From the IMG/VR virus record IMGVR_UViG_3300023174_002543, positions 248,001-312,000 of that record: 64,000 nucleotides of DNA; one strand, written 5' to 3'. Positions 5,532-33,021 of this stretch are shown one piece after another. The position numbers were made by a program, and so were the translations under genes. Each line of letters begins with the position of its first letter. Position 1 is the first letter of the stretch. The notes below the pieces were generated by a model. That model made no database searches. It was not told where the DNA came from and saw nothing but the letters and a program-made list of their open reading frames with translations.

Positions 5532-5553
5532 ATTTTTTGTGTAAGGATTTGCC

Positions 5554-6486
5554 CTAACGAATGTTATTGAAGTTTACATTTACTGCATAACCCACATCTG
5601 GATTATACTTGACCAACGCCTGAACTATATTTTCAAAACTTTGCCCAAATCTCTTTACTAATTTATCTAATGCTATAGGTTGATCTTTTTCATTCATAAA
5701 TTGACCTTGATCGTCCGTATTATCAATCACAAAGTCTTCACCGTGAGTATGGTAATACTCATCAAGTTGATCACCCGAAGTTATGGGAATATCATCTATG
5801 AACACACTAAAGTATAACTGATATTTCTCACCCGTATATTGTGGTTGTTTTGGTAATAATATTACTAATGGAAAACTACTATGATAACTATCAAAATAAT
5901 TTGTTCCTGTTGTAGCCGCTGTGCACCAGCGAGTACCTTGACCATAATAACATGCCGCTTGTTTATTTTCAGGTATGATTGCTCTTACAGTATTATCTTG
6001 GTATAACTCTAATGCATTACCCTTTGCCATATTTGGATCAGTTGGGTCAGGATATTCATCTAGTACATCAAAAAAGTCTTCAAATGATCTGTACCCTAAA
6101 ATATCGTTACGTGGACTAGATATCTTTTTACGTAATACAAGGTTATAAAACTTTGTCAAATAGTCGGTTAGTGTACTGCGTAAATCTTCAAATAACGTGC
6201 CATGAATATATTTCCACTCATTAATATAAGTTTTAATTATCCAGGGAGTATATTGATTATTTCTAGTAGGATCAACATTTTCAAATGCTTGTATTACTCT
6301 TGGTAAGTAGGTTTCAGCATTATTTTGAATCTCTTGTTCTATAGCATCACTACCAGTGATAGGTTTACGTATACCCAATTGCAATATCATGGTAGTGTCA
6401 TTAACAATAGCTTGTAATAAGGCAGGACCAAACTTTTGAGTAGTTATAGCTCTGTTGTATTCAATTAAAAATTCGTTTGCTCTCAT
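5554..6486 (-). CDS. putative internal head protein with PcfJ-like region
   Basis: N-terminus MRANEFLIE (capsid-targeting-like); motif ACYYGQGTRWCTAA...NYFDSY...KYQL. Confidence 0.55.
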   Translation of the reverse strand: MRANEFLIEYNRAITTQKFGPALLQAIVNDTTMILQLGIRKPITGSDAIEQEIQNNAETYLPRVIQAFENVDPTRNNQYTPWIIKTYINEWKYIHGTLFEDLRSTLTDYLTKFYNLVLRKKISSPRNDILGYRSFEDFFDVLDEYPDPTDPNMAKGNALELYQDNTVRAIIPENKQAACYYGQGTRWCTAATTGTNYFDSYHSSFPLVILLPKQPQYTGEKYQLYFSVFIDDIPITSGDQLDEYYHTHGEDFVIDNTDDQGQFMNEKDQPIALDKLVKRFGQSFENIVQALVKYNPDVGYAVNVNFNNIR

Positions 6487-6502
6487 TTAATCATCCTTTA
6501 TG

Positions 6503-8002
6503 TTATTGAAACATTTCAGGGTGATCTTTACCGTATACTTTGATGTACTTACCAGCAGCCATATCCGCCAGCATTTCAATTGGGCTACCTGGATAGCTAT
6601 CACCATCTTTAATCATGTTCAATTGCATTTGACGATGATGTGTTAGTTCATGGAATATGGTACGGAAGATATCAATTAAGTTTCTGTTACCAACATATAC
6701 CCAAATATCATTACCTTTATGCACACCGGTATGATGACCTGCTTGTGCTACCTTAGTATTCTTACTAATAGTAATCTTTGGATAAGGTTTTTGCATGTTA
6801 AGTGTCTTGTATGACCACTTAATAAAGTCTTTTATCTTTTGTATATCTTCCGGGCCTTCTACGCCCTCATTCACATTACTTTTTTTTTGGGATAATGGCG
6901 TGATGTTACCTTCTGGTTCTTTAACATCACGTTGTGTTGGTGGAAAAGTTCTTTTACCGTGTTGAACTTTATTCATTGGGCGCTTTAGTGGTAATACATC
7001 ACCTTCCATCACACCTTGCTCATCTTCAGGTTTAGTAGTCAACACAAACTTCTTACCTGCATTAAATGACTTTGCCATCATTGTCCGAGCGGCTTTAGTA
7101 GCAGTTTCTTTGTTACGGTACTGATAGGGTGTGCCCATTTTATCTTTAACAATTTTACCATTAGCACGGATATACCATGTTCTTGTATCAACAGGATCTG
7201 GAACATGATATTCGTCATCTTCTCTATGACGCTTGCCTAAACTCGGGGAATTAGGATCTGCAAAACCATGACGATAACCGCTTTCCGCCACACCTTTAGT
7301 AACAATATAACCTTTGCCTTTACATTGTGGACAATTTGTAGCAACTTTTGTGCTATCTTTCTTTGTCATAGTATGATAACCTTTGCCATTACAATGTTTG
7401 CAATCGTGTGATGTGCTATCTTCCGCCACACCTAGTTTCTTATCTCTCTTTACAGCATCACTGTATGTTTTCAATACACTAGGATTCTTTTTAACAAGTT
7501 TGTTTAACTCTTTGCCACTTTCAATATCTTTTGACTTTTGAACATCTTTGGCGTATTTTTTAGTTAAGTCAGGTCTTGCCTTCAACAAATCTCTTAGCAT
7601 TTTATCATATTCATCTTCTTCTAAACTGCCTTCCGCCACACCTTGTCTTCTACGCATAATTTCATCAGTGATGGCAGCTATAATTTTTAATCCAATTTCA
7701 TCTCTTTTGATAGTTTTAATCATACGCAAAAGATCGGATGTTGAATAATTTCTATAATGAGCATGTCCGCTCTCGGTTACATCTTCTTCACCTAATCTGT
7801 TTTTGATTTTCTTAATCCAAGTATCAGGGGTATGTCCATATTTCTTAACAAACATGTCGTGTAATTTTTTACCCGTGATTTTATGCTTAACAGAAATGTT
7901 TTGCATTAAACGGTCAATAGTGTCGTAGTTGTGGCGCTTAAGTTTAGGTAATCTATTCTTAAGTTCGTCTACGGCGGATTCTTCTAATTCGTGTGCTCTC
8001 AT
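6503..8002 (-). CDS. modular putative head polyprotein (GVAE-delimited modules, CxxCxGxG Zn finger, C-terminal HExxH zincin-like domain)
   Basis: MRAHELEE leader; junctions GVAEG, GVAED, GVAES, GVMEG, NVNEG; CKHCNGKG...CPQCKGKG; RTIFHELTHHRQ...SPIEMLAD. Confidence 0.7.
   Translation of the reverse strand: MRAHELEESAVDELKNRLPKLKRHNYDTIDRLMQNISVKHKITGKKLHDMFVKKYGHTPDTWIKKIKNRLGEEDVTESGHAHYRNYSTSDLLRMIKTIKRDEIGLKIIAAITDEIMRRRQGVAEGSLEEDEYDKMLRDLLKARPDLTKKYAKDVQKSKDIESGKELNKLVKKNPSVLKTYSDAVKRDKKLGVAEDSTSHDCKHCNGKGYHTMTKKDSTKVATNCPQCKGKGYIVTKGVAESGYRHGFADPNSPSLGKRHREDDEYHVPDPVDTRTWYIRANGKIVKDKMGTPYQYRNKETATKAARTMMAKSFNAGKKFVLTTKPEDEQGVMEGDVLPLKRPMNKVQHGKRTFPPTQRDVKEPEGNITPLSQKKSNVNEGVEGPEDIQKIKDFIKWSYKTLNMQKPYPKITISKNTKVAQAGHHTGVHKGNDIWVYVGNRNLIDIFRTIFHELTHHRQMQLNMIKDGDSYPGSPIEMLADMAAGKYIKVYGKDHPEMFQ
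7002..7645 (-). repeat. in-frame direct repeats AGGTGTGGCGGAA (3 exact + 1 variant)
   Basis: Plus-strand ttccgccacacct at 7283-7295, 7421-7433 and 7631-7643; variant ccttccatcacaccttg at 7002-7018; spacings 210, 138 and 279 nt. Confidence 0.92.
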
Positions 8003-8007
8003 ACTTA

Positions 8008-8015
8008 TATTTATC
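8008..8015 (-). promoter_or_regulatory. T4-like late promoter GATAAATA, 5 nt before ATG
   Basis: GATAAATA-TAAGT-ATG(8002); the same motif recurs upstream of many structural genes in the window. Confidence 0.75.
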
Positions 8016-8028
8016 TCAAAATAAGAAA

Positions 8029-8113
8029 GTGCTCACTTTTGAGGTCCAGTAGCGAATTGGATGACTCAAGCCAGCAGCCGGCTACACATAACCCAAAGGG
8101 TCCTAAGGTGTGT
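8029..8113 (-). ncRNA. candidate structured RNA/DNA element (three hairpins, possible pseudoknot)
   Basis: GC-enriched intergenic: ACACA[CCTTAGG]ACCC-TTT-GGGT[TA]TGTGT, AGCCGG-CTG-CTGGCT, TGAG..TCCA-ATTCGCTAC-TGGA.CTCA, then AAGTGAGC that can pair with loop TTCGCT. Confidence 0.5.
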
Positions 8114-9580
8114 TTATTTTAAACCTGCGAGTGATTTAATTCTGTTTAGTGATTTAGATTCATCTGCTTGCACTGATGATACATCTTCATCAGGTAATTT
8201 GTCATTTTTATTATCGGTTGATACTGAAGGGTTACTAGATGCTAATTGAGTTTTAGCAATACCGTCTAATGTATCACCACGTTTTATTGTATAATCTTGT
8301 CCACCTACTTTAATAGTATCTCCGGCTCTAATTTTGTTAACATCTTTAATTTTATCAGCATTTGCTTGCTGAATTGACTGTGCTCCTGCAGAGCCTTTAT
8401 AACCTGAATCAGGTGATGCAACATTACGTGAATTTGGTGTAGTATTATTCGGTTCTGGTACATCTACACCTTTTTCATCAGTGTTGGGTGTGGTAGGGGG
8501 TGCAACAGCAGGCGCCGGCGGTTGTGATTTAACAGATGGCTGAACAGGTGATTGACCACCTCGTCCGGTCATACCTTTGTTTGCTGCAGCAGCATTGGCT
8601 GCACTCGTAACAGGATTTAGATTAGTAGACTTTGCAGGAGAGTTATATGCATCTCTAGCCGCATTGACTCCCATTGCACCAAAAGATATTGCAGGACCAA
8701 AACCCGGCACAAACCCGCCGGCTGCGCCTAATGCAGATATAACTGCACCTGTTCTATCACCTTTTTGATATCTTCTATATGCTTCTTCAGCATCTAATGC
8801 TATACCTGCACCGGGAATAACTCTTCCCAATACTTTTTTACCTATTGACTTTGCTCCGGCTTTTGCTCCAGCCTCTGCACCCGCTTCGACCCCTGTTGCT
8901 ACGTTAGGTCTATTAGCAGGAACCTCTTTACCCATAACTGGATCTATTCTAGTACTGGTATCTAATGCCGGTGTTTTTTGACCAAGTGTTGATGATATCT
9001 TTCCTTTAGCCGCATCGACCCCGGCATCAATGGTGGCTCTAACTTTTTTACCTGCATTGTAACCTGTATCATATGCGGCAGTATTAGCTGGTGGTGTAGA
9101 AGCCGGTTTAACAGGGACTTCTCTGCCCATAGAAGGTTCACCGGGTCTAGCTGTCCCTACATTATCATTAGGAACCGGTCTTCCGCCTACAGATGCTCCA
9201 GGTTTATCTATTCCAACTCTATTTGGTATATTTCCAGATGATGTGTTAGAGACAGGTGGTGTTGATGATACTTGTCCAGTTCTGTTATTTTTCCATACTG
9301 CTGGGTCGGAACTAGAGACGGGTGGTGTTGAAGAAGTTACACCAGTTCTTGGGTTAGTCCAAACTGATGGCTTATTATTTACTGTACGTGCAGGATCATA
9401 TCCTAGGTCCTGCATAGTTTTTATTTGACTAGGTGTTAATGGTGTATTGGTTTTATTTAACGGTACGCCTGCTTTTTCTAAATCTAATTGTGCTTTATAT
9501 ACAGCCGCTTGTCTAGGATCAGCTAAGTTTACAGTAGGCTTAGTTGCTTCGTTAATTTTATTAAATTCACTGAATCTCAT
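8114..9580 (-). CDS. putative virion/ejection protein with Gly-rich hydrophobic segment and permuted LysM-like motif
   Basis: MRFSEFNKINEA leader; Pro/Thr-rich repeats; KKVLGRVIPGAGIAL...GAVISALGAAGGFVPGFG; NKIRAGDTIKV...YTIKRGDTLDGIAK; C-terminal SLNRIKSLAGLK. Confidence 0.6.
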   Translation of the reverse strand: MRFSEFNKINEATKPTVNLADPRQAAVYKAQLDLEKAGVPLNKTNTPLTPSQIKTMQDLGYDPARTVNNKPSVWTNPRTGVTSSTPPVSSSDPAVWKNNRTGQVSSTPPVSNTSSGNIPNRVGIDKPGASVGGRPVPNDNVGTARPGEPSMGREVPVKPASTPPANTAAYDTGYNAGKKVRATIDAGVDAAKGKISSTLGQKTPALDTSTRIDPVMGKEVPANRPNVATGVEAGAEAGAKAGAKSIGKKVLGRVIPGAGIALDAEEAYRRYQKGDRTGAVISALGAAGGFVPGFGPAISFGAMGVNAARDAYNSPAKSTNLNPVTSAANAAAANKGMTGRGGQSPVQPSVKSQPPAPAVAPPTTPNTDEKGVDVPEPNNTTPNSRNVASPDSGYKGSAGAQSIQQANADKIKDVNKIRAGDTIKVGGQDYTIKRGDTLDGIAKTQLASSNPSVSTDNKNDKLPDEDVSSVQADESKSLNRIKSLAGLK

Positions 9581-9597
9581 ATATATATATTTATCTA

Positions 9598-9675
9598 TTA
9601 AACCGGGCTGTATGGATTGCGAAATTTATCGTAACCGTCATCTTCAGGGTATACAGGATAATCGTTTGGATTCAT
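9598..9675 (-). CDS. 25-aa micropeptide MNPNDYPVYPEDDGYDKFRNPYSPV
   Basis: ATG overlaps the dps stop (TAATG) and the ORF fills the gap up to the late promoter at 9595-9588. Confidence 0.5.
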   Translation of the reverse strand: MNPNDYPVYPEDDGYDKFRNPYSPV

Positions 9676-10115
9676 TATTCACGCTCAGTTTTAAGAATAC
9701 TACGAATGAACCAAGCCTTCTTACCATATAAGTCTTGTAGTTCAGCCATATAGTTAGCAATACCTTGTTGACGGTCTTCTGTTGCTTGGTCAAACATTGT
9801 AGTAACTAACTCAAGCATTTTTTCAATGTCTTGTAATGTTTCTGCAAACATTAATTGAGCACGTGGAATTTTTGTTTGGTCTTCAATAATAGTTAGTTCA
9901 GCATATCGTTGTAAACTACCTGGAGTATAACTACCTACTATTCTGATATACTCTGCAATAGTATCAATTGTTTCATTTACATCTTGGTATAGTGTATCAT
10001 AGAATTGATGATATTGTGGGAAATTACTACCTTCAATGTTCCAATGAAAGTTTTGACTTTTAATAGCAAAACTCTGTGTGCTTGCTAATAATATTTTTAG
10101 GCTATCTGATAACAT
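9675..10115 (-). CDS. dps: Dps/ferritin-like DNA-protecting protein
   Basis: QNFHWNIEGSNFPQYHQFYDTLY...IDTIAEYIR and C-terminal KKAWFIRS: Dps ferroxidase motifs. Confidence 0.92.
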   Translation of the reverse strand: MLSDSLKILLASTQSFAIKSQNFHWNIEGSNFPQYHQFYDTLYQDVNETIDTIAEYIRIVGSYTPGSLQRYAELTIIEDQTKIPRAQLMFAETLQDIEKMLELVTTMFDQATEDRQQGIANYMAELQDLYGKKAWFIRSILKTERE

Positions 10116-10170
10116 TTTGGAAGAGTCCCTCTGTTCTTTAAATAAAAATCTACTAAATCTTGATCCATGA

Positions 10171-11814
10171 TTAGTGTTTCAATAACAATGTACTTAGTAC
10201 ACCTGTATCATTAGCACTTAAATCTGGCTCACCGGGTGCTACGATAACATTATATTTCATACTAGTGTTTTGGCTTTTCTTTACTGCCCACTCATCATAA
10301 CTTAATATTGAGTTAGCACTAATGCCATATTCTTTTGCTAGTCGTTGTTTTAGTTCAGGTAGTTGGTCCGGTTTTACTTGCCACTGTCCTTCAGTACCTT
10401 TGACTAAATTACCCTTAGCATCTTTAACTAATAAGTCTTGGAATAGTCCAGTTGGTACAATACGACTATTCTTAGTTTTATCTAAGTTAGGATCAGCAGC
10501 TTTAACTTGTTTCTCTTGTGAAGTGTGTGCGCCCTCACTCCAATTAATAATGAAGTTGCTTGGTTTTTGTGCAAGTGCAGCATTAGCCATTTTAGTATAA
10601 GCATAGAATTTAACGTCAGGTAAACTTTGTGCTAACTTAAATGCCAAGTCTAAGTATTCTGGACTAAAGAAGTCGCCAGCATCATGCCAGCGAATACTAA
10701 CAGAGTATCCACCCTTCTTACCTAAACTTTCTTCTTTAGCAATTTCATTTGCTAGTTGTTCAAAGAAACCATCTGGGTTATTCAATAGATATGTAATAAT
10801 ACGACCATCACTTAACCATGCGGCTTCAAACTGAATCTTACCACCTTTCATAGCAAAGCAATCTATTTTACAACTACCAGCACCCGGACATGTGTTGACT
10901 ACAATTAAGTTGTTTGTGTTTTCATCTAGTGCAAGACCAACTAATGCAGCAAAGCCAATGTTAAAGAACTGTTCTAAGTCACCGTTGCTGTGCTTCATCT
11001 TTTCATTTTGCTTTAGTAACTTTTTAGGACGAACTGCTAATGCTTGTTTAACATCTTCTTCGCGGTATCTTTTACCAGTAGCATCATAATACTTGATTAC
11101 GCTACTACGATGAATGTAAGGCATACGATATTTGTCTTGCTTTGTTTTACCAGACACATATTTCTCTTTGCCTTTTTTATCTAATTTAACTTGACCTGTT
11201 TTCTTATCAATGTCAGGAGTACCCGCAATACGTGTCATGTAGTCTTGGAATTCTTGCCCAGCAATGTCACGCTGGTCAATAGGTAGTTTAGTTGCTTCAT
11301 CTATACCCATATCTTTGTGACGTTGGGCTATTGATTCTTTAGCGCCTAATTGACTAAGTGCTTCTGCAGCTTTTGCTAGAGCCTCAGGGTTAGCAGAAGG
11401 GAATTTATTCATAATAAACTGTACTATGCTATTACTCCAAAGATACATTTTTTCTTTGTTATTCAAATCATGTTCAATTGATGGAGTAGGTACATAATAT
11501 TGTTTATTAGATTTATATTCCTGCCATAATCTGTCATATTGAGTTGAATCTACAGGAGTAACGATATTATGCATCATGCGTTGAAATGCTTCTTGATTCT
11601 TATCAATTCCGGTCTTTTTACCTAATATTCTGAGAACATAATTTTTTAATTTGTTTATTCCATTACTAAAAGCACCTTCGTCTAATTCTTCATTATCATC
11701 AAAGTCATCTGCCTCAGGATGTTGAACAAACTGGTCAACACTCATAATTTTAATGCCGCTAGGCGCACCGGGTAATTTAGGCGTTGCGCCTTCCATTAAT
11801 TCTATGATATTCAT
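10171..11814 (-). CDS. GP88-family (radical-SAM-like) domain fused behind N-terminal modules
   Basis: KQNEKM...TCPGAGSCKIDCFAMKG...IRWHDAGDFFS...FYAYTK; leader MNIIELMEG; junctions LDEG, IDEA. Confidence 0.7.
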   Translation of the reverse strand: MNIIELMEGATPKLPGAPSGIKIMSVDQFVQHPEADDFDDNEELDEGAFSNGINKLKNYVLRILGKKTGIDKNQEAFQRMMHNIVTPVDSTQYDRLWQEYKSNKQYYVPTPSIEHDLNNKEKMYLWSNSIVQFIMNKFPSANPEALAKAAEALSQLGAKESIAQRHKDMGIDEATKLPIDQRDIAGQEFQDYMTRIAGTPDIDKKTGQVKLDKKGKEKYVSGKTKQDKYRMPYIHRSSVIKYYDATGKRYREEDVKQALAVRPKKLLKQNEKMKHSNGDLEQFFNIGFAALVGLALDENTNNLIVVNTCPGAGSCKIDCFAMKGGKIQFEAAWLSDGRIITYLLNNPDGFFEQLANEIAKEESLGKKGGYSVSIRWHDAGDFFSPEYLDLAFKLAQSLPDVKFYAYTKMANAALAQKPSNFIINWSEGAHTSQEKQVKAADPNLDKTKNSRIVPTGLFQDLLVKDAKGNLVKGTEGQWQVKPDQLPELKQRLAKEYGISANSILSYDEWAVKKSQNTSMKYNVIVAPGEPDLSANDTGVLSTLLLKH

Positions 11815-13625
11815 TTGTTATTTCCTGATAGTCTAAGTAAGTTATTTAATTCAACTGTAGATTCACCTAAATCTTTTGGTTTTTCTTGTTGTTTATTTTT
11901 GGCATCTTGTTCTTGTGCTTTACGCTTTAAGTTAGCAATCATTTTAGCCCATTGTTCAGGAGTATATAGTCCACCAATTAAGCCATCATCTTCATCATCT
12001 TTTACTTCTGCTACTTCTTTTTTGTCATTTGGTTCATCTGGTATTGGAACTGGTTTAACTGAGTGCCAACCCGGCCCGGGTGGTGCCATCACTACATCAA
12101 AGTTTTTACCACCACCTAATTCTAATATCTTTTTGATATTATTCATTGTTTTAGTTTCAGAAGAATTTTTAACAACAACAGTACCATCTGGTTTAATTTC
12201 ATGTACTAATTGCTGAACAATATTAGACATGCCGGGCATTTTTTTTGAACCACGATTCAATGCTTTCTTAGCGGCAGCTGCCTGTGGGCTAGAATTCTCA
12301 TGTATTTGTTTTTGCATTGACGATGCAGGTACTATAGTCCAATTACTATCATATGGGTGTGTTTTATGTAATTCGGTACTTGCTTGTACTTTAGGTATTG
12401 GCCCGGTTACATCATCACCCTTTCCGTGATATTTTCCGTGAAAATCTAAATTACCGCGCATCACTATATACCACTGGTCATTAGATACAAGTTCATTTAG
12501 TTCAACGGATTCGTTATGTTTTTTTTTACTGACAGAATCTTTAAATGATTGTGCAGTTGGTGCACCTTTGCTACCCGGCTTACGCATATGCTCACCTGAA
12601 CCATTTTTGATTCGTTTTTGTTTAGCATGTATGTTAGCCCATAGACCCTTGCTTTCTTCTTCTATTTCGTCACCGGGTGTAGGTGTCGTTGGTGCTGCGG
12701 TAGGTGTTGCGGCTGGGTTGCCTCCAGCAGTAGCCGGAGGATAATCGGCCGCTGTTTTACGGGCACTCGGCGCTACTCCATTTGTATATTGTGTTGGTTT
12801 CAACGTAGCATTAGGCATGTTGTTTGGGTTAACTACACTTTTAGCCATTCCCTGAATATTTGATGCCGCTTGATTAGCATCAAATTTTTCTAACTCATCT
12901 GGATTAGCAGAGTTAATAGTTTGTTGTGCTTGCAGATATTGCTGTTGTTGTTGCGGTGATAATCTTGCGTATTCAGGGTCTTTTGTTGGGTCTTGGCCTC
13001 TGAATCTTCTAACGTCATTAGAAACACCTCTCATTAATTGAGGTGTAAATTGTCTAATAGCATTACCGGCTTGTTGTGCTTGTTGTGCTGGGTTACCTGC
13101 TTCTTTTAGTTTTGAAATTTTTTGTTCAGCAATCATTACTAATTGTTTTAGTTCTTGTACACTCTCACAATGCCATCTACGTAAACTCTTATTGATATTA
13201 CTGTTTGGATCTCTTGCAGTCTTAGCACCTGTACGATGCTTTTTCATACCACGCATTCTAGCACAGAAACTAGCACGGCGTTTTGCAGATTTACTACCCT
13301 TTTTTAATTTACTAGGCTTAGTAGTTACAGCAGTTTGAATTTTACTACCTGGATGACTACGGCGATAACTCTTTACAGATTTTTGACTCATGCCGCCTGC
13401 ACGTGGATTGTTATGCTTGCTCCAGTTCTCACCTTCCGCCAATTCATCTTTTTTAGAAATAGCAATTGCTGCCTGTTGTTTGGCATTAGCGGCTTCATTT
13501 GCCGGTACACAATTGTTAACTCTAACTCCGCCCTTCATTTTAGTGCCTTGCTTTTTATAGCCTGTCCAGCACTTAGGATCAAGTCGTTTCTTTTCTTCTA
13601 CAATCGTAATTTGATTTATTTTCAT
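11811..13625 (-). CDS. modular basic putative head polyprotein (CWTGY module, SFCARM/RRWHC module, GLWANIHAK module)
   Basis: MKINQITIVEE leader; small basic modules of the kind common in T4-like environmental phages, separated by ANEA, LAEG, LKEA, IEEES, LNEL, IHEN, VAEV, LGES. Confidence 0.65.
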   Translation of the reverse strand: MKINQITIVEEKKRLDPKCWTGYKKQGTKMKGGVRVNNCVPANEAANAKQQAAIAISKKDELAEGENWSKHNNPRAGGMSQKSVKSYRRSHPGSKIQTAVTTKPSKLKKGSKSAKRRASFCARMRGMKKHRTGAKTARDPNSNINKSLRRWHCESVQELKQLVMIAEQKISKLKEAGNPAQQAQQAGNAIRQFTPQLMRGVSNDVRRFRGQDPTKDPEYARLSPQQQQQYLQAQQTINSANPDELEKFDANQAASNIQGMAKSVVNPNNMPNATLKPTQYTNGVAPSARKTAADYPPATAGGNPAATPTAAPTTPTPGDEIEEESKGLWANIHAKQKRIKNGSGEHMRKPGSKGAPTAQSFKDSVSKKKHNESVELNELVSNDQWYIVMRGNLDFHGKYHGKGDDVTGPIPKVQASTELHKTHPYDSNWTIVPASSMQKQIHENSSPQAAAAKKALNRGSKKMPGMSNIVQQLVHEIKPDGTVVVKNSSETKTMNNIKKILELGGGKNFDVVMAPPGPGWHSVKPVPIPDEPNDKKEVAEVKDDEDDGLIGGLYTPEQWAKMIANLKRKAQEQDAKNKQQEKPKDLGESTVELNNLLRLSGNNK

Positions 13626-14269
13626 ATCAGTCCACCATTTTCTACTAATTCTTTATGTGCATTTAATATACTAGCAACATCAGGCTTTTCCATAAAAGGT
13701 TTATTATTAATAACACTTACATGTGTGGGAGGATATCCTTCCCATAATTGATGTATATCTTCGGTTGTTATTGTGTTTTTATTGTGTATTCTATGTAATT
13801 CTTTTGCTACTGCGTGTGGACCATGATACCAGAAGTCATTATCTTCTTCTATCATATTCATTTCTTCCAGCATTGCTTGCTCAATTTGTTTTCTAAGAAG
13901 CACATCAGATATAGTTCTACGTTTACCTAAATCACGTAGTTTTGCTTTTTTAAACAATTCTTCTTGTCTTTGTTTAGCAAGTAGATTTTCTTCACTTATT
14001 TCATCTTCATAGATGCCGGCTTTACTACTGTTAGCATATTTTTTACTAGTTTTAATACCTGAGAATATACTATTACTACGCTTATTCATCTCACCCATTG
14101 GTTGTGCAATAGTTGCTACACATCCTGAAGTCATTTCTTCTACTTTGTCAATCTTCTTTTCTTTTTCTAAGACAGTAGGATGACGACCAAAACGAGGTGC
14201 GTCACCGGCATTCTGAGTAATCCCAGGATCTCCGGCGACTGAACCTTCTTGTAAATGACTGATTTTCAT
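13622..14269 (-). CDS. putative head-associated modular protein
   Basis: MKISHLQEG leader; VEEM, IYED, ISEE, IEED junction-like sites; late promoter GCTAAATA at 14297-14290. Confidence 0.55.
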   Translation of the reverse strand: MKISHLQEGSVAGDPGITQNAGDAPRFGRHPTVLEKEKKIDKVEEMTSGCVATIAQPMGEMNKRSNSIFSGIKTSKKYANSSKAGIYEDEISEENLLAKQRQEELFKKAKLRDLGKRRTISDVLLRKQIEQAMLEEMNMIEEDNDFWYHGPHAVAKELHRIHNKNTITTEDIHQLWEGYPPTHVSVINNKPFMEKPDVASILNAHKELVENGGLI

Positions 14270-14305: not shown

Positions 14306-17300
14306 TTAGGCTATCTTTATTCCAAATACTGCCCAGTTATAACCATCACTCCAAACATCCCAATATTGGGTAGTAGCTTGTGCTAACACTTTGGTACTTG
14401 CAGAACTACCGCTTGGACCATAGAAGTTACCTGCTGGTGTACTTAATGTAATGTTTTGTGAAGTGTTTTGCCAGAATCTATAACCAATACCTGAGTTAGC
14501 AGCCTGTGTTGGGTCTGGTAGCGTAACAGTATATGTACCTGAACCAGCAAATTCAATAAATCCACTAGCATCTGAAGTTGTTAATGTAGTAGTTGTAGTA
14601 AGCACTCTAGCACTCTTGCGTATGCCACCAGTAACACTTAAATTACCTTGTATTATTGTATTTCCAGAAACAGATAAATTACCTGCAGTTTTTAAATGAC
14701 CGGCTGATGCATCAATAGTAACTTTAGATGTGTGCTTTAAATTTCCATCATATATCATTACATCCATATCACCTGCACTAGCATTATCTAGTGTTGGAGT
14801 AGATGATGTAATAAATCCACTTAATATACTTGTACCATTAGCATAGTTAATTTTAGAAGTATCAGATGGTAATGTTAAATTACCGTTTTCATCGAATGTC
14901 CAACGATGTGCTATACCGTCACTTGCTTTCTGATTTTCAATGTATACTTGAGGTTTGTTTATTAAATTATCTTTGAATGTTACATCTATCCAAGACCATG
15001 CATCATTAGGTCCAGTAGCAACATCTTCTACGTATACATCCCAAACACCTGCTGTTTGATACTCTACTGTTCTATAATTTTCAAATGTTGTAGTGAGTTG
15101 CAATGATGTATCAGAAGTTATGTTACCTGTAGGGACTGTTGTAGTTCCGTCAGTACCAAATGTCCATTGATTGTTATTTGTACTAGTTCCAACAACAACA
15201 TTGCCGCCGTTCTTTTCAATCTTAACATACTGGTCGTCATCGCCCAAGTACATGTCAGTAATTGAAGGATCGCCGGCTATTAAGTGAACATGATGGTCTT
15301 CACTACTACCACTTCTTGTTAGTGTAAGCGGTGATATCAATCCACCAATACTAAACCCTACAGCATTGCTAAGGGTGATAGTGAAAGTTGTCATAGTACT
15401 TGATACTGGTATAGTCCAAGTTATTAGTTTAGAAGGCTCACTAGTAAATGTCAATGTACCTGTTAACGCTCTACCTAATTGTTGTTGAGTACAATCAGTA
15501 AATGTATAATCTACTGTTCCGGTAACTGGGGTAAGGTTATAATCAGGAATTATAGTTATAGTTATAGTATCACCGTCCGCAAATCCACCAGGATGATCGG
15601 AACTAATTCCTTGAGCACCTGTTAGGCGAACTACTAAACTTTGTCCAGCCAATGCATTCGGTGGTGTGATGGCTGTTGAGTTGGCTGTTTCACTTAAGAT
15701 AGTACCTTGTGGTAATGCTAAGTTACCATCTTTATCAAATGTCCAAGTACTAGTGACTCCATATGAATTAACAGTTTGCAATCTAATATTGCCGGCAACC
15801 GTTACCACTTCAAAATCACTAGTGTCAGGCGGTGTGATATTAAATGTTTTTTGTCCACCGTTATCCGTCGTTTGAGAAATATTAGCACCATTAGCAATTG
15901 TCAATACAGCATCATCATGGAAAGTCCATTGATATCCGTCGACTTCAATAGCAGCATAAGTTTCTTCTACCCAAATATAATTATTATGGCTTTGCATCGA
16001 GGCATAATTTAATCCAACGATATTAACTACATTGGTATCACCGTCATTATTAATTACACCACCTCCCGGTACTGTTAAATTACCATCTTTATCAAATACC
16101 CAATTCTTATTAGTAACAGTAGAAGTTGGGAAGTTGATACTAACAATTCCAGTCTGACCTGCAGGCAATGTTCCATCTATTCTACCACTATATCTTTGTC
16201 CATGGTCATGACCTGGATCATTTTGTCCTTGTCCTGTAAATTGCTGACTTAATACACTAGTAAATGTTTGATTTCCTGATAGTGTTGAGTAAGTAACAAT
16301 AACAGTTGCTCCTAAACTCGCACCAATTAATACACTCCATATAGGAGCCTGTGCCGTAAATATATTAATTTCAATTTGTTGTTGATTACGTTGACGCCAG
16401 CCGTCTATAACTCCAAAACCATTGCCGATATCTACATCAGTATAAAACTGAGAACCATTTGACCCTATAGTATGGTCAGTGGTTACAAATTCACCTGATC
16501 TTAATACTACATTACCATAATTGTTGAATAGTGTAGTAACTGCACCAGGATCTGTTCTACCATTATCAGGTAAGGTCAATCCAGCCGTTGCACCATGCGC
16601 TGTGTCACTATTATTAATTTGTCCGCCGGCATAGTTATATATTGTATCATTACGAAATTCCCAATTACCTGTACTTGCACCGCCTGTAGGTGCAGCCGCA
16701 AATACGCCATTGCCATAAAGAATATTACTTGCATTACCGTCTTTATCAATAGATGATATATTACCTAATGTTGGCTTACTAGTTAAGTCTGCATAACTAC
16801 CACTATACAAACTAGGTTTATTAGATAGATTGTTATAGTCACCATTAAACAAACTTGGCTTATTTGTTAAGTCTACATAGCTACCACTGAATAGACTTGG
16901 CTTATTTGTTAAGTCTGCATAACTACCACTAAACAATGCTGGCTTACCTGATATATTAGCCCATGTTGCTTTGTTATCAACATAAGTAGTAGTAGCATAA
17001 CTAGATAATGCACTAGTATCAACTTTTCCAGCTAATGCACTAGTGATTGTACTGGCATAACTACTATTATTTGCTAATGAATTTGCTAATTCTTTTAATG
17101 TATCCAATGCGGCGGGTGCCCCATCAACTAAATTATTAATTGCTGTAGTAACATATGATTGTGTAGCATAACTAGCAAGACTAGGTAGATTTAACAAATC
17201 ATTGTAACTACCGGACGTTGCAATTGTGGCAAAACTAGGTTTACCGGTAACATTAACATATGCAACTGAATTTGCAACATCTGCAATATTTGCACGGTAT

Positions 17301-17590
17301 GAACTCCCTACTGAACCACTATAGGTACTTAAGTAATTTTGTACAATAGTGTTAATTAATCTTGTCATAGATACGTTACTAACAACCGGATCTGTTGGGA
17401 TAGTAACTGTTGCAGTATTAGCAATGGGGGGAGTAACTAATGGTTTTTTAGAACCAGAACCAAATTGTGGATCTACTTTGGTATTAACAGTAGTAGATGA
17501 TGCTACTGATGACATATCAATGAACGTAGATTGCGTTGTTCTGATACTAGGATCTACTTTATTGTTTATTTTTTTATTTGTAGTTGCCAT
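14306..17590 (-). CDS. tail fibre protein
   Basis: Likely start MATT at 17590; LVDGAPAALDTLKELA motif; repeated SGSYxDLTNKP units; five WxFxxDGxLTxP-type repeats; beta-rich C-terminal tip. Confidence 0.8.
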   Translation of the reverse strand: MATTNKKINNKVDPSIRTTQSTFIDMSSVASSTTVNTKVDPQFGSGSKKPLVTPPIANTATVTIPTDPVVSNVSMTRLINTIVQNYLSTYSGSVGSSYRANIADVANSVAYVNVTGKPSFATIATSGSYNDLLNLPSLASYATQSYVTTAINNLVDGAPAALDTLKELANSLANNSSYASTITSALAGKVDTSALSSYATTTYVDNKATWANISGKPALFSGSYADLTNKPSLFSGSYVDLTNKPSLFNGDYNNLSNKPSLYSGSYADLTSKPTLGNISSIDKDGNASNILYGNGVFAAAPTGGASTGNWEFRNDTIYNYAGGQINNSDTAHGATAGLTLPDNGRTDPGAVTTLFNNYGNVVLRSGEFVTTDHTIGSNGSQFYTDVDIGNGFGVIDGWRQRNQQQIEINIFTAQAPIWSVLIGASLGATVIVTYSTLSGNQTFTSVLSQQFTGQGQNDPGHDHGQRYSGRIDGTLPAGQTGIVSINFPTSTVTNKNWVFDKDGNLTVPGGGVINNDGDTNVVNIVGLNYASMQSHNNYIWVEETYAAIEVDGYQWTFHDDAVLTIANGANISQTTDNGGQKTFNITPPDTSDFEVVTVAGNIRLQTVNSYGVTSTWTFDKDGNLALPQGTILSETANSTAITPPNALAGQSLVVRLTGAQGISSDHPGGFADGDTITITIIPDYNLTPVTGTVDYTFTDCTQQQLGRALTGTLTFTSEPSKLITWTIPVSSTMTTFTITLSNAVGFSIGGLISPLTLTRSGSSEDHHVHLIAGDPSITDMYLGDDDQYVKIEKNGGNVVVGTSTNNNQWTFGTDGTTTVPTGNITSDTSLQLTTTFENYRTVEYQTAGVWDVYVEDVATGPNDAWSWIDVTFKDNLINKPQVYIENQKASDGIAHRWTFDENGNLTLPSDTSKINYANGTSILSGFITSSTPTLDNASAGDMDVMIYDGNLKHTSKVTIDASAGHLKTAGNLSVSGNTIIQGNLSVTGGIRKSARVLTTTTTLTTSDASGFIEFAGSGTYTVTLPDPTQAANSGIGYRFWQNTSQNITLSTPAGNFYGPSGSSASTKVLAQATTQYWDVWSDGYNWAVFGIKIA
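16770..16950 (-). repeat. tandem 42-nt coding repeats (FSGSYADLTNKPSL)
   Basis: ALFSGSYADLTNKP / SLFSGSYVDLTNKP / SLFNGDYNNLSNKP / SLYSGSYADLTSKP. Confidence 0.8.
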
Positions 17591-17603
17591 TTTTTCGTCT
17601 TTC

Positions 17604-19349
17604 TTATGGTTGTAGTGTCGGTGGCGTTCCGTCACGTTTTATTTTGCTACCTAATTTCTTAGCATTTTGTTGCATTGTGTATGGTGTAATATCTACTGTT
17701 AATGCAGTTTTAAATCTAGGGTCGTTACGTTCTTTTTCACTTGGTATATATCCTGACGCTTCCTTCATTAGATTCTTAGCATCACTTTTTTTAATTAGTT
17801 TTCCCCAACCGTCAGGATAAAGATTGAGGTTATCTTTACCCCAACCACGCCACATCTTTTTTCCTAATTTTGTTTGATTTAATTCACCTTCATTGTCAGT
17901 GCTTTTCTTAATATCATTACCCAACATTTTAGCATAAGCATATATTTGATATGCAATATTCTGTCCTCTATAATCTGGTTCTACTCTAGTCATATCGCTT
18001 TCTAGCCAATGTTCGCCATTTTTATCTCTATGAGCAATAAAGTTTGTGTATGCTATAGGATTTTTTGTACTATTATATGGATCAAATACCTCAATAGTTA
18101 ATCCGGGACTGTCTTCACCCCAATCATATCCCTTGCTTGTATATGTATTTGCTCCTTCAGTGCCAGTCGCTATATAAATATACCTGCCAAACTTCATTTT
18201 ATGTTTGAAATTAGGATTTAATGTGTTTGTATCTACAGCCTCATTGATATTTTCTTTCATTAGATGTTTAGCGTCTTTGCCCCATTTCTTCCACATTTTG
18301 TTACCCGCAACGGTCTGATACTTACTAGGTCTAACAGAAAATCCTAAACTCTTGGCAACTGCATACATCATAGCGGCAATTCCCTTACCTTGATGACTAT
18401 CATCTACCATTGTGTCATCACTTTCTAACCAACTATCATTCTCGTCCTGGTGAAGAACTAATTCTGCGGTACCTACTATTTGTTCATTTTTTGGTAATTT
18501 GGGATCATACGCAGTAATAAACATACCCGGAATATAATCAAAACCATTTAATGTATTTTGTACTCTGAATACATAACCGCCAAACTTAACTACTTTAGAA
18601 AGTGCCTTAGGTTCATAAAGAAAGTCTTTATTTACTGATTCAGGTAAACTTAGTTTCTTATCGTGTAATGTCTGTAGTTTTTCATATAATCTTTTAATAA
18701 TACCCTTGCTACGTAGTATTTTAAATGCTAGATTTTCTGGACTAAATTCTCCGCCCTCATCTAATCCTGCTTGACGATATTTCTTTATTGTTTTAAGTAC
18801 ATATTTAATCTTGTGTGAATCACTACTACGCATAGCGTATTCAGCCAATTTATATAATTTACGATATTTATTCTTTGTAGCAACTTGACTTATATGTGCT
18901 TTTCGCTTTCTTGGCAATTTAATCCAACTATCACGTAATATGCTATATTCACCTAAACTAATTACGGGTTCGTTACTATCTTGTACATATAATTCTACGT
19001 CAATTCCACCAATTGTTATGCTATGTGTATCATTATATATTGTCTTTTTAGCATCAAAGAATTCACGGTAAACTGGATCATTATTAAATTTACTCATATC
19101 TACTAATATATGTAAATCAATATCACTATGCTTTGTATAACTATATGCCGCATTACTTCCGCTTAATGTAATATCTTGTACTTCTATGTCATTAATTCCT
19201 AAATGATCCACAAAATCCTGTGCAATTAATAATAATTGGTCATGGACTTGAGGCTTTAATCTATCCCCATTGAACAACTCCGGGTTTAATTCTTCGTGGA
19301 AATGTATAGCGTCTAATAGGCTAAAACTGTCAAATTCTAATAGGTTCAT
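17604..19349 (-). CDS. pol-beta-family nucleotidyltransferase fused to two GNAT-like acetyltransferase domains
   Basis: SGSNAAYSY..SDIDLHILVD...VELYVQD; GNAT motif A twice (VDDSHQGKGIA, VEPDYRGQNIA); junctions LPES, INEA, MKEA. Confidence 0.75.
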   Translation of the reverse strand: MNLLEFDSFSLLDAIHFHEELNPELFNGDRLKPQVHDQLLLIAQDFVDHLGINDIEVQDITLSGSNAAYSYTKHSDIDLHILVDMSKFNNDPVYREFFDAKKTIYNDTHSITIGGIDVELYVQDSNEPVISLGEYSILRDSWIKLPRKRKAHISQVATKNKYRKLYKLAEYAMRSSDSHKIKYVLKTIKKYRQAGLDEGGEFSPENLAFKILRSKGIIKRLYEKLQTLHDKKLSLPESVNKDFLYEPKALSKVVKFGGYVFRVQNTLNGFDYIPGMFITAYDPKLPKNEQIVGTAELVLHQDENDSWLESDDTMVDDSHQGKGIAAMMYAVAKSLGFSVRPSKYQTVAGNKMWKKWGKDAKHLMKENINEAVDTNTLNPNFKHKMKFGRYIYIATGTEGANTYTSKGYDWGEDSPGLTIEVFDPYNSTKNPIAYTNFIAHRDKNGEHWLESDMTRVEPDYRGQNIAYQIYAYAKMLGNDIKKSTDNEGELNQTKLGKKMWRGWGKDNLNLYPDGWGKLIKKSDAKNLMKEASGYIPSEKERNDPRFKTALTVDITPYTMQQNAKKLGSKIKRDGTPPTLQP

Positions 19350-25942: not shown

Positions 25943-25950
25943 ATTGCCCT

Positions 25951-32514: not shown

Positions 32515-33021
32515 TTATTTTAAAAATTCGTCTATTGACAAATCATAGTGAATACTATTTATTCTGTGGATACCTAACAAATACAGAACATAACTGCTAA
32601 CACTACTTCCCCTGCCAACTCCCCATACTATGTTATGTTTACGCATAGTATCAACCATATACTTACAATATCGCAATAATGGAAACATATCACGTTCTTG
32701 GAACTTAATTAGTTCTTCACCTACTCGTTGCAATTCATAATCTTCCTTGCACATATCAAGTGCATATTGTGCTATATCCATAATATAATAGTCATTTGGC
32801 ATATACCAGTTATTTTGACATTCAATGTCAAAATCCTCAACTGATATATCAGTTTCTTTATATACTATAATTTTGGGTTTTTGTTGTAGCTCCAGTATAT
32901 CATCAAAGTTGATTGGCTTTTCAACCAAACATTGTCTGATACATAGATCGGGATCGGTCATGTAGGCAACGAATAACTCGTCTTCTCCCAGTATTTGTCT
33001 ACCATACTTATCATTACGCAT
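32515..33021 (-). CDS. stand-alone fragment of DNA polymerase III alpha (DnaE)
   Basis: QRVGEEL...MVDTMRKHNIVWGVGRGSSVSSYVLYLLGIHRINSIHYDL..EFL matches the DnaE GxGRGS region but stops before PDIDxD; likely start 33021. Confidence 0.75.
   Translation of the reverse strand: MRNDKYGRQILGEDELFVAYMTDPDLCIRQCLVEKPINFDDILELQQKPKIIVYKETDISVEDFDIECQNNWYMPNDYYIMDIAQYALDMCKEDYELQRVGEELIKFQERDMFPLLRYCKYMVDTMRKHNIVWGVGRGSSVSSYVLYLLGIHRINSIHYDLSIDEFLK

What the first reader, a model, noticed from the sequence alone, without database searches (positions are those of the whole stretch)
7002..7645. In-frame cassette array: an identical GC-rich 13-bp DNA repeat marks module junctions (GVAE)
Seen: AGGTGTGGCGGAA occurs exactly at 7643-7631, 7433-7421 and 7295-7283, with a 2-mismatch copy at 7018-7002 and a partial TGGCGGAAGG at 13441-13432 in another modular gene. 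The segments between copies (210, 138, 279 nt) are unrelated to each other: a helical repeat, a CxxCxGxG Zn finger and an unknown domain. The repeat keeps the codons GTG GCG, which are unusual in this A/T-ending genome, so conservation appears to be at DNA level and not only of the peptide. Inference: the motif doubles as a protease site and as a recombination/insertion site that adds or shuffles in-frame cassettes, like an integron inside one ORF. No recombinase is visible in the window.
Basis: partly seen in the sequence, partly recalled or inferred. Interest (0 to 1): 0.88.

Follow-up and report, generated by a model that had tools for sequence, protein, structure and literature searches.

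The report
Domain cassettes joined by one DNA word
A giant uncultivated phage builds a multi-part protein from interchangeable domain cassettes, each joined by the same ~20-base DNA word that also encodes a likely protease cut site, and this word marks where related phages have swapped cassettes.

Summary
AGGTGTGGCGGAA occurs three times exactly and once degenerately, in frame as GVAE/GVME, in ORF 6503-8002(-).

It is part of a widespread, apparently undescribed system in uncultivated T4-related (Atu_ph07/Rak2-like) jumbo phages.

- **Codon conservation.** In 79 loci fetched by protein similarity alone, 36 of 48 GVAE sites use GGT GTG GCG GAA, against 0.5% expected from codon usage. Conservation extends to about 20 nt (xAG CAA GGT GTG GCG GAA GGC).
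- **Gene layout.** The gene is a platform: a conserved 72-aa N-domain and a conserved C-terminal minimal zincin (HExxH...E). Most homologues are "empty" at about 195 aa. Others carry 80-680 aa of unrelated cassettes between the two domains.
- **Cassette exchange.** Syntenic genes about 90% identical in their ends hold entirely different cassettes. DNA homology breaks at the word. Of 308 junction pairs sharing a module on one side, 301 differ on the other.
- **Linkers.** Every junction lies in a predicted disordered linker and fits hydrophobic-x-Glu, the T4-type head-protease site.

Best reading: a packaged polyprotein cut at GVAE, whose junction DNA serves as portable homology for cassette exchange. 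Cleavage and the recombination mechanism are inferred. No recombinase or integron-type site was found.

The parts
6503..8002 (-). Platform gene (499 aa): N-domain, four cassettes, C-terminal zincin-like domain
   Evidence: ORF and translation. Over 200 homologues share the N and C ends with variable interiors. Syntenic orthologues are L256, L257 and L259.
7787..8002 (-). Conserved N-terminal domain (residues 1-72), starting with a T4 capsid-targeting-like tag MRAHELEE
   Evidence: 60-95% identical in over 100 proteins. Model confidence (pLDDT) about 96, four helices. The same small domain sits near the N-terminus of a cyanophage virion fibre.
7769..7780 (-). First junction, degenerate here (D-V-T-E)
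   Evidence: At the orthologous position, relatives have GVAE, GLAE (GGTTTGGCGGAA) or GVAE with GTA. It lies in a low-confidence stretch, residues 73-81.
7643..7768 (-). Cassette 1 (residues 79-120), helical
   Evidence: pLDDT 88-92. Present in only 2 of 119 homologues.
7628..7647 (-). Junction word copy 1 (core GGTGTGGCGGAA at 7642-7631; Q-G-V-A-E-G)
   Evidence: The 30-nt identity with L256 covers the word plus the following GSLEE codons.
7433..7630 (-). Cassette 2 (residues 125-190), helical repeat
   Evidence: Found in 0 of 119 homologues.
7421..7433 (-). Junction word copy 2 (L-G-V-A-E-D)
   Evidence: It is the 5' edge of the 158-nt block that is 93% identical to L256.
7295..7420 (-). Cassette 3 (residues 195-236), CxxCxGxG zinc finger
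   Evidence: Pfam DnaJ_CXXCXGXG and Anti-TRAP, both sub-threshold. The same cassette sits directly after the N-domain in L256, with different neighbours on both sides.
7283..7295 (-). Junction word copy 3 (K-G-V-A-E-S)
   Evidence: The homology block shared with L256 ends 7 nt past it.
7016..7282 (-). Cassette 4 (residues 241-329), folded alpha/beta module
   Evidence: pLDDT 87-95 for residues 271-325. A homologous module lies in a different position in L257.
7004..7016 (-). Degenerate junction word (GGTGTGATGGAA, Q-G-V-M-E-G)
6506..6865 (-). Conserved C-terminal minimal zincin-like domain. HELTH at 6652-6638; the third predicted metal ligand, Glu476, at 6577-6575
   Evidence: Invariant H451, E452, H455, E476 and D480 in 79 sequences. 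The model (pLDDT 86) shows a helix, three strands, the HExxH helix and a Glu helix. Best fold matches are Wss1 (TM 0.60, probability 0.96) and jannalysin, but E-values are not significant.
8008..8015 (-). GATAAATA, resembling a T4-type late promoter, 12 nt upstream of the ATG
   Evidence: Of 17 ATAAATA copies on the - strand, 10 lie within 40 nt upstream of gene starts. Function is inferred from knowledge of the T4 family.
13431..13442 (-). Decayed junction word (TTG GCG GAA GGx, L-A-E-G) in neighbouring modular ORF 11811-13625

Best explanation
ORF 6503-8002 is a 'platform' polyprotein of a T4-related jumbo phage. A conserved N-terminal domain carries a T4-like capsid-targeting tag, and a conserved C-terminal minimal zincin closes the protein. 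Between them sits an array of unrelated small domains.

Each domain ends in a disordered linker, (E/K)-Q-G-V-A-E-(G). After late expression the protein is probably loaded into the prohead. It is then probably cut after the Glu of V-A-E by the head-maturation protease, which in T4-type phages recognises hydrophobic-x-Glu. This would free several small passenger proteins that travel with the DNA.

The linker is encoded by a near-invariant word of about 20 nt, xAG CAA GGT GTG GCG GAA GGC. The word acts as portable homology. Recombination between copies, within a genome or between co-infecting relatives, deletes, inserts, duplicates and swaps cassettes in frame. This makes the cargo hypervariable while the platform stays constant. 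The word's synonymous sites are kept because only cassettes flanked by intact words keep moving, or because exchangeability is selected.

Shown: the repeat, its nucleotide-level conservation, the platform and empty-gene architecture, cassette turnover with breakpoints at the word, and the disordered linkers.

Inferred: packaging, cleavage and which enzyme cuts, and that general homology-driven recombination rather than a dedicated enzyme does the exchange.
For: **Codon fixation**
- 36 of 48 sites exact against 0.48% expected in protein-fetched loci.
- 13 of 13 in loci L121-L138.
- 60 of 117 after correcting for ascertainment.
- The control word built from the commonest codons never occurs twice in a locus (0 of 118), against 31 of 120 for the real word.
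- The EGVE peptide in the same proteins uses free codons.

**Extended logo**
- The codon two positions before GGT is AAG, GAG or CAG rather than AAA, GAA or CAA, across different amino acids.
- The codon after GAA is GGC 77 times against GGT 19, confirmed in the unbiased set.

**Cassette exchange**
- Orthologues in identical synteny have 88-91% identical ends but different interiors.
- The zinc-finger cassette is 93% identical to L256 over 158 nt. The block starts 1 nt before one word and ends 7 nt after the next.
- Internal blastn breakpoints fall at the word in 24-25% of cases against 2-5% at random. Protein alignment ends fall there in 29% against 7%.
- 301 of 308 junction pairs share only one flank.
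- The window's own cassettes occur in 0-2 of 119 homologues.
- Empty 190-210-aa genes make up 94 of 120 hits.
- One cassette lies in a different gene in L257.

**Maintenance**
- The word shows 0.5-0.8 mismatches per 12 nt, while adjoining shared modules are only 59-74% identical at DNA level.

**Protease site**
- All junctions fall in stretches with pLDDT below 50, between confident domains.
- Variants at the same position (DVTE, GLAE, EVEE, DVQE, INEF, LNEF) keep hydrophobic-x-Glu.
- Neighbouring and related ORFs start with M-[RK]-x-x-E-[FL], like the T4 capsid-targeting sequence, which is cut by gp21 (PMC9026906).
- A late-promoter-like GATAAATA lies upstream.

**Effector-type cargo in relatives**
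- Cargo includes sigma-70 region 4, HD domains, ART-PolyVal, LysM and DUF6321.

**Lineage**
- The sheath is closest to Atu_ph07 and Rak2-like T4-related jumbo phages (PMC6102473).

**Precedents**
- Motif-mediated shuffling without a dedicated recombinase is documented in T4-type phages (PMC2839356, PMC3157838).
Against: - No proteomic or biochemical evidence exists. No cultured phage carries the word.
- The head protease gene is not in the window and was not identified.
- 20 nt is short for efficient homologous recombination.
- Conservation over long divergence could instead reflect a direct nucleic-acid function.
- The orthologous junction in L122-L127 has decayed to GMSE, so the word is not needed in every lineage.
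- Many expanded homologues have no GVAE at all.
- Flanks of word copies are barely more alike within a locus than between loci (0.447 against 0.427, p about 0.05). This gives little sign of intragenomic homogenisation.
- Breakpoints at linkers would also be seen if random recombinants were simply filtered by selection for intact domains.
- Metagenomic loci are not fully independent samples.
Confidence: 0.55

Rival explanations
1. A dedicated, still unidentified phage enzyme (a site-specific recombinase or nuclease) recognises the ~20-nt word and catalyses in-frame cassette excision and insertion. This would be a true 'integron for protein domains'.
For: The conserved stretch (about 20 nt, including synonymous and flanking positions) is the size of a protein recognition site. 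The word is kept while adjacent DNA diverges to about 60% identity. Cassette turnover is extreme. The word is absent from cellular genomes and from cultured phages, so it is specific to this clade.
Against: The word has no dyad symmetry or hairpin (inspection). All copies are direct. Pfam and PHROG scans of about 37 window ORFs found no integrase, transposase or homing endonuclease. The T4-type precedents work without one (PMC2839356). Only 64 kb of a 367-kb genome was visible.
Confidence: 0.15
2. The fixed codons serve an RNA or translation role. Examples are a ribosome pause at domain boundaries caused by a G-rich island, an SD-like AGGUG, or a two-tetrad G-quadruplex. Cassette boundaries then coincide with the word only because both sit in linkers.
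For: The word is a G-rich island in a 36% GC genome. When the next codon is Gly it fits GG-N3-GG-N1-GG-N2-GG, and ViennaRNA predicts a G-quadruplex for site 1 and for the consensus. Positions kept across different amino acids (xAG, GGC) raise the G content.
Against: Window sites 2 and 3, and about half of all sites, lack the fourth GG tract and fold without a quadruplex. The predicted stability is small. The other rare codons (GTC, GCC, GGG) are not used, so rarity is not what is selected. The SD match is only 5 nt. A pause signal does not explain why DNA homology between relatives breaks exactly at the word.
Confidence: 0.12
3. The cutting step is different. The gene's own C-terminal zincin, not the prohead protease, cleaves the GVAE linkers, in cis or in trans, as proposed for metallopeptidase domains of polyvalent proteins. 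It may cut before the hydrophobic Val.
For: The zincin is invariant in all 119 homologues. It has the helix / three-strand / HExxH-helix / Glu-helix core described for polyvalent-protein peptidases. All junction variants have Val, Leu or Ile in the same position, which would also suit a thermolysin-like P1' preference. The platform gene occurs in 10-11 of 120 motif loci against 0 of 115 control loci.
Against: Most zincin-bearing genes are 'empty' and have no GVAE (2 of 120). In the unbiased set, 29 of 48 GVAE sites lie in other genes. The invariant Glu at the end of the motif and the T4-like N-terminal tags fit a prohead protease that cuts after Glu (PMC9026906, PMC10052503). Fold matches are not statistically significant.
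Confidence: 0.25
4. There is nothing special at the DNA level. A conserved peptide with ordinary codon bias, chance, or assembly artefacts at a short repeat produce the pattern.
For: Short repeats can cause chimeric metagenome assemblies. GGT and GAA are the preferred codons anyway.
Against: There is a 150-fold excess of one encoding in protein-fetched loci. The word is shorter than typical assembly k-mers. Arrays always stay in frame. The same arrays are recovered on several independent contigs and samples (P0018 on 6 contigs, P0001 on 3). The EGVE control shows free codon use.
Confidence: 0.01

Closest known systems
Polyvalent proteins of phages and conjugative elements (Iyer et al. 2017, PMC5512222)
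   Same: Many unrelated effector-type domains sit in one phage polypeptide. There is an embedded zincin-like metallopeptidase with HExxH plus a downstream Glu. Release of the domains by proteolysis and delivery with the DNA are predicted. One family member carries the ART-PolyVal domain.
   Different: Here the domains are separated by one fixed linker peptide, encoded by one fixed ~20-nt DNA word. The gene is a constant N/C platform with an empty form. No such junction word or cassette logic is described in that paper: a text search of it found no occurrence of the term 'linker'.
T4 internal proteins with capsid-targeting sequence, cut by prohead protease gp21 (PMC9026906); giant-phage ejection proteins cut at S/A-x-E or A-x-E (PMC10052503)
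   Same: Short N-terminal tags resemble the T4 capsid-targeting sequence. The motif ends in Glu with a hydrophobic residue at P3. The cargo is variable and not conserved, which suggests an arms race. Late expression is plausible.
   Different: In T4 each internal protein is a separate gene with its own tag. Here one tag or N-domain would carry a string of passengers separated by internal sites. Neither cleavage nor packaging has been shown, and the protease gene was not seen.
PeSL cassettes: promoter/stem-loop motifs that mediate modular shuffling in T4-type phages (PMC2839356, PMC4122927)
   Same: Short conserved DNA motifs flank variable units. Close relatives differ by insertion, deletion or replacement with breakpoints in the motif. 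No dedicated recombinase is known. The authors themselves draw the integron comparison.
   Different: PeSLs are intergenic regulatory elements flanking whole ORFs. The word here is coding, in frame, and flanks protein domains inside one ORF.
Conserved in-frame motifs in T-even tail-fibre adhesins (gp38 glycine-rich motifs, gp37 motifs) that allow swapping of specificity segments (PMC3157838)
   Same: In-frame conserved motifs separate hypervariable segments, and recombination between them exchanges segments.
   Different: In gp38 the motifs are structural parts of one domain, and their order and number are fixed. Here the units are autonomous domains of any kind and number. The motif is a disordered linker with strong synonymous-site conservation.
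Integrons (IntI, attI, attC gene cassettes)
   Same: There is a platform with an empty state and a variable array of cassettes bounded by a repeated site.
   Different: No integrase was found. The site is not an attC-like hairpin. Cassettes are protein domains in one reading frame rather than promoterless genes.

Membership tests
Polyvalent proteins (Iyer et al. 2017) | Two or more unrelated domains in one polypeptide encoded by a phage or mobile element | tested here: met
   The model shows five or more separate confident blocks joined by low-confidence linkers. Cassettes are unrelated to each other and to those of orthologues.
Polyvalent proteins (Iyer et al. 2017) | Zincin-like metallopeptidase domain (N-helix, three-stranded sheet, HExxH helix, Glu helix) | tested here: inconclusive
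   HExxH plus Glu and Asp are invariant, and the predicted topology matches. The best structural matches are zincins (Wss1 TM 0.60, jannalysin), but Foldseek E-values are 0.14 or higher. There is no Pfam match.
Polyvalent proteins (Iyer et al. 2017) | Effector domains typical of the class | tested here: met
   Among 79 family members: ART-PolyVal PF18760 (1), HD (1), sigma-70 region 4 (5), LysM (4). None of these is in the window protein itself.
Polyvalent proteins (Iyer et al. 2017) | Packaged in the virion and delivered into the host | not testable with these tools
   There is no cultured relative with the word and no proteome.
T4-type capsid-targeted internal proteins | About 10-residue N-terminal targeting tag ending in a protease site | tested here: inconclusive
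   M-[RK]-x-x-E-[FL]... followed by hydrophobic-x-Glu is seen in 7 neighbouring ORFs and in 109 of 209 related ORFs. This is a resemblance to the tag described in PMC9026906, not homology.
T4-type capsid-targeted internal proteins | gp21-type prohead protease in the genome, with cleavage after Glu | not tested
   The head module lies outside the 64-kb window. The lineage is T4-related by its sheath and other genes (PMC6102473).
Integron | IntI tyrosine recombinase next to the array | tested here: not met
   None was found among about 37 window ORFs scanned with Pfam and PHROGs. The rest of the genome was not seen.
Integron | attC sites: imperfect inverted repeats forming a hairpin | tested here: not met
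   The conserved stretch is about 20 nt with no dyad symmetry, and the flanks carry no information.
PeSL / conserved-motif modular shuffling in T4-type phages | Short conserved DNA motif flanking variable units, with breakpoints between close relatives inside the motif | tested here: met
PeSL / conserved-motif modular shuffling in T4-type phages | Motif is an intergenic early promoter plus a terminator stem-loop | tested here: not met
   The word is coding and in frame, with no stem-loop.
Shufflons / invertible tail-fibre segments | Inverted repeats plus an invertase | tested here: not met
   All copies are in direct orientation on the coding strand.
Diversity-generating retroelement | Reverse transcriptase, template/variable repeat pair, adenine-specific substitutions | tested here: not met
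   The variation is whole-module replacement, not point substitution. No reverse transcriptase was seen in the scanned ORFs.

The most novel reading that the evidence does not exclude
The ~20-nt word is the recognition site of a dedicated, unidentified phage machinery that assembles and reshuffles in-frame domain cassettes. This would be a natural 'domain integron' that builds polyproteins of injected effectors on a constant targeting/peptidase platform, across a large clade of environmental jumbo phages.
Probability: 0.15. Interest if true: 0.95.

Novelty: new variant of a known kind. Interest (0 to 1): 0.76.

Why it matters
If correct, this is a general way for large phages to carry many small passenger proteins on one capsid 'ticket' and to re-deal that hand quickly. 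The passengers include likely host-takeover or anti-defence factors such as sigma factors, an ADP-ribosyltransferase and nucleases or hydrolases.

The same short sequence would serve as a protease site in the protein and as the exchange point in the DNA. That is a clear natural case of selection on synonymous sites for evolvability or for cassette mobility.

It also has practical uses. The word is a search key for finding packaged effector cassettes in metagenomes. It defines hundreds of autonomous small domains with known boundaries. It suggests a design for loading several cargo proteins into phage heads.

Full-text searches of the held library found no description of it.

Tried and rejected
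- **Near-identical or cultured relatives.** Megablast of the gene against 50,697 phage records found nothing. A 30-nt query around the word gave only 16-nt chance matches.
- **Host repeat, Chi or uptake sequence.** The 20-mer occurs in only 6 loci among 185,579 species genomes. One of these is probably a mis-binned phage contig. Rejected.
- **Phage tRNAs for GTG or GCG.** There is no tRNA gene in the window.
- **Rare-codon pausing.** The other rare codons are not used.
- **Internal start at the in-frame GTG.** There is no SD at a usable distance, and nothing would terminate the upstream part. Rejected on inspection.
- **G-quadruplex.** One is predicted only where Gly follows the word, and it is weak.
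- **Intragenomic homogenisation of word flanks.** The effect is marginal (0.447 against 0.427).
- **Are exact words linked to 'switched' contexts more than variant words?** Uninformative, because almost all contexts are switched.
- **Whole-protein fold search.** No significant matches. The domain-only search gave zincin-like matches without significance.
- **Literature.** Searches for GVAE plus phage and for capsid-targeting polyproteins found nothing relevant.
- **Tool errors.** One repeat finder failed on a strand argument, and one paper search failed on term length.
Full report
**1. Observation**

On the - strand the 13-mer AGGTGTGGCGGAA occurs exactly at 7643-7631, 7433-7421 and 7295-7283. 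A 2-mismatch copy lies at 7016-7004. With up to 2 mismatches there are 6 matches where 0.8 are expected.

All four copies lie in frame in ORF 6503-8002(-), 499 aa, as Q/L/K-G-V-A-E and Q-G-V-M-E. GVAE occurs nowhere else in the six frames of the window. A partial copy (TTG GCG GAA GG, L-A-E-G) sits in the neighbouring ORF 11811-13625.

GTG and GCG are 8% and 6% of Val and Ala codons here. Only 0.27% of GVAE peptides should be written this way.

**2. The word is conserved at the DNA level across a large clade of uncultivated phages**

A scan of IMG/VR for the 14-mer hit the 120-locus limit. Nearly all matches are in frame as (K/E)(Q/E/K)GVAE(G/A/E/D) inside long ORFs. 31 loci carry 2-5 copies. 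A control word with the commonest codons (GGT GTA GCA GAA) also hit the limit, but never twice in a locus and mostly in unrelated proteins.

Because the first set was chosen by the DNA word, I used sets chosen by protein instead:
- 18 loci found with the N-terminal domain: 13 of 13 GVAE exact.
- Three syntenic orthologues found by exact protein look-up: GCG in 12 of 12 sites and GTG in 9 of 12.
- 79 metagenome loci found with the C-terminal domain: 36 of 48 exact (75%) against 0.48% expected.

A conserved peptide in the same proteins (E-G-V-E, ahead of the C-domain) uses GGC GTA, GGC GTT, GGT GTA, GGG GTA and GGC GTC freely. Peptide conservation alone therefore does not fix codons in these genomes.

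The logo of 176 exact sites shows information from -5 to +15. The consensus is xAG CAA GGT GTG GCG GAA GGC.
- The codon two positions before GGT is AAG (38), GAG (32) or CAG (17), against AAA (10), GAA (17) and CAA (4). This runs against the background preference and across different amino acids.
- The following Gly is GGC 77 times and GGT 19 times. The unbiased set confirms this, 18 against 6.

One-mismatch variants are mostly transitions. There are 36 synonymous and 25 non-synonymous variants, against 183 exact copies. This suggests some selection on the peptide plus much stronger maintenance of the nucleotides than neutral synonymous drift allows.

**3. What the gene is**

More than 200 proteins share the first about 72 residues at 60-95% identity but differ widely in length. 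Of 119 homologues, all keep the C-terminal about 120 residues and 107 keep the N-domain. The window's own four cassettes occur in 2, 0, 1 and 1 of them.

A search with the C-domain alone shows that 94 of 120 hits are 190-210 aa. These consist of the N-domain, a short acidic linker and the C-domain. This is an 'empty' gene, and only 2 of the 120 contain GVAE. The protein-fetched metagenome loci give the same length distribution: a peak at 150-250 aa and a tail to over 850 aa.

The C-domain has invariant H451, E452, H455, E476 and D480. Its model (pLDDT 86, pTM 0.83) is a helix, three strands, the HExxH helix and a Glu-bearing helix. That is the zincin core described for polyvalent-protein peptidases. 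The best fold matches are Wss1 (probability 0.96, TM 0.60), jannalysin, an M61 peptidase and CapP, but E-values are not significant.

The full-length model has confident blocks at residues 1-72, 82-122, 129-189, 271-325 and 380-499. Every junction lies in a stretch with pLDDT below 50.

**4. Cassettes are exchanged at the word**

L256, L257 and L259 share the window's gene order: Dps/ferritin, LysM protein, the modular gene, a DsbA-like ORF and PolB. They are 87-90% identical in DNA over more than 5 kb.

Their modular genes (593, 618 and 676 aa) match the window gene only in the first about 220 nt and the last 390-500 nt. The interiors are different sets of modules, each closed by the word.

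The zinc-finger cassette is shared with L256 at 93% over 158 nt. The block begins 1 nt before one word and ends 7 nt after the next, and its neighbours differ on both sides. Another cassette (window 12540-12659) sits in the DUF6321 gene here and in L259, but inside the modular gene in L257.

Across all collected ORFs:
- 24-25% of internal high-identity DNA breakpoints fall within about 10 nt of a word, against 2-5% at random.
- 29% of protein alignment ends fall at GVAE, against 7%.
- Of 308 junction pairs that share a module on one side, 301 have an unrelated module on the other.
- The word shows 0.5-0.8 mismatches per 12 nt next to modules that are only 59-74% identical in DNA. It is therefore maintained, not merely recent.
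- It can decay: the orthologous junction in L122-L127 reads GMSE.

**5. Why a protease site is likely**

At the junction after the N-domain, relatives carry GVAE, GLAE, DVTE, EVEE, DVQE, I-N-E-F or L-N-E-F. All are hydrophobic-x-Glu.

Neighbouring ORFs begin MRAHELEE, MRANEFLIE, MRFSEFNKINE, MNIIELME and MKISHLQE. About half of related GVAE-bearing ORFs begin similarly. These starts resemble the 10-residue capsid-targeting sequence of T4 internal proteins, which gp21 removes at a site ending in Glu. Giant-phage head proteases also cut after x-x-Glu motifs (PMC9026906, PMC10052503).

A GATAAATA, resembling a T4-type late promoter, lies 12 nt upstream of the ATG. Its interpretation rests on my own knowledge of T4-family late promoters.

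The phage itself is T4-related. It has a sheath, a sheath stabiliser, a ClpA-like ATPase, a J-domain protein and a PolIII-alpha fragment. Its sheath is closest to Atu_ph07 and Rak2-like jumbo phages (PMC6102473).

Cargo in relatives includes sigma-70 region 4, HD domains, ART-PolyVal, LysM and DUF6321/DUF5872. These modules also exist as small stand-alone proteins in cyanophages and pelagiphages.

The cutter could instead be the gene's own zincin, which I keep as a rival. Most zincin genes are empty, however, and most GVAE sites lie in other genes.

**6. Mechanism of exchange**

The word has no dyad symmetry, and all copies are direct. No recombinase, transposase, reverse transcriptase or homing endonuclease was seen in the ORFs scanned. 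The word is absent from cellular genomes and from cultured phages.

The nearest documented mechanisms are recombination between short conserved motifs in T4-type phages. These are the intergenic PeSL cassettes, which form mini-circles and were themselves compared to integrons, and the in-frame conserved motifs of tail-fibre adhesins (PMC2839356, PMC4122927, PMC3157838).

I therefore favour homology-driven exchange by the general recombination machinery. The word would be maintained because only cassettes with intact words keep spreading, or because exchangeability is selected. A dedicated enzyme or an RNA-level role cannot be excluded.

**7. Comparison and verdict**

The gene works like a polyvalent protein and like T4 internal proteins. 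Its cassettes move like PeSL units. It is not an integron, shufflon or DGR by their defining features.

What is new is the combination: a constant targeting/peptidase platform with an empty state, autonomous domain cassettes in one reading frame, and a single ~20-nt word that is both the linker or cut site and the exchange point. The word shows about 150-fold suppression of synonymous alternatives across hundreds of environmental phage contigs.

**Limits**
- Metagenomic loci are not fully independent.
- Cleavage, packaging and the recombination mechanism are inferred.
- Only 64 kb of a 367-kb genome was examined.

Noticed in passing
window 5537-6500 (ORF 5554-6486, - strand): This 310-aa ORF starts with the tag-like MRANEFLIEY. 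It is a whole-gene insertion absent from three syntenic relatives. The breakpoints lie just after the stop of the modular gene and before the DsbA-like ORF.
   Followed up: partly
window - strand, upstream of ATGs at 8002, 9580, 19349, 28642, 34946 versus 43670, 48097, 48609, 51487, 57891: NATAAATA, resembling a T4-type late promoter, lies only 11-14 nt before the ATG in the first group. That would give leaderless or nearly leaderless mRNAs. For the tail genes it lies 24-29 nt upstream, with room for a ribosome-binding site.
   Followed up: partly
window 5554-14269 and 17604-19349 (- strand): A run of ORFs begins M-[RK/N]-x-x-E/x-[FLI]... followed by hydrophobic-x-Glu. Their lengths differ between relatives: the DUF6321 gene is 604, 471 and 383 aa; the GP88 gene 547, 421 and 494 aa; the LysM gene 488, 508, 443 and 420 aa. 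They are probably further modular, capsid-targeted proteins.
   Followed up: partly
window 12540-12659 (- strand); L257:7219-7338: The small cassette 'ESKGLWANIHAK...' is also a stand-alone ~50-aa protein family in cyanophages. It lies in the DUF6321 gene here and in L259, but inside the platform gene in L257.
   Followed up: partly
window 23657-26757, 28811-29584, 30821-31510, 32515-33036, 9675-10115: Host-like genes typical of Atu_ph07/Rak2-like jumbo phages: a ClpA/B-like AAA+ protein next to a J-domain protein, PhoH (the only + strand gene in that stretch), a Bax-inhibitor-1-like membrane protein, a fragment of PolIII alpha, and a Dps/ferritin.
   Followed up: no
window 17604-19349 (- strand): This 581-aa ORF has an N-terminal nucleotidyltransferase-like region (PHROG 36119) followed by two similar repeats. 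The repeat sequences suggest acetyltransferase-like modules.
   Followed up: no
L256:2543-3340: A 266-aa cassette in an orthologue starts with a twin-arginine signal-like RRGFLKGMGAAAVAG. This is odd for a protein thought to be packaged in the capsid.
   Followed up: no
window 14306-17635 (- strand): The tail-fibre-like protein contains tandem 'SGSYADLTNKPSLF'-type repeats.
   Followed up: no
L267 (MAG contig CAILDT010000116.1, 8.9 kb): Three copies of the 20-mer lie on a short contig binned with an uncultured Bacteroidetes MAG. It is probably a mis-binned phage fragment, though it could be a weak hint about the host.
   Followed up: no
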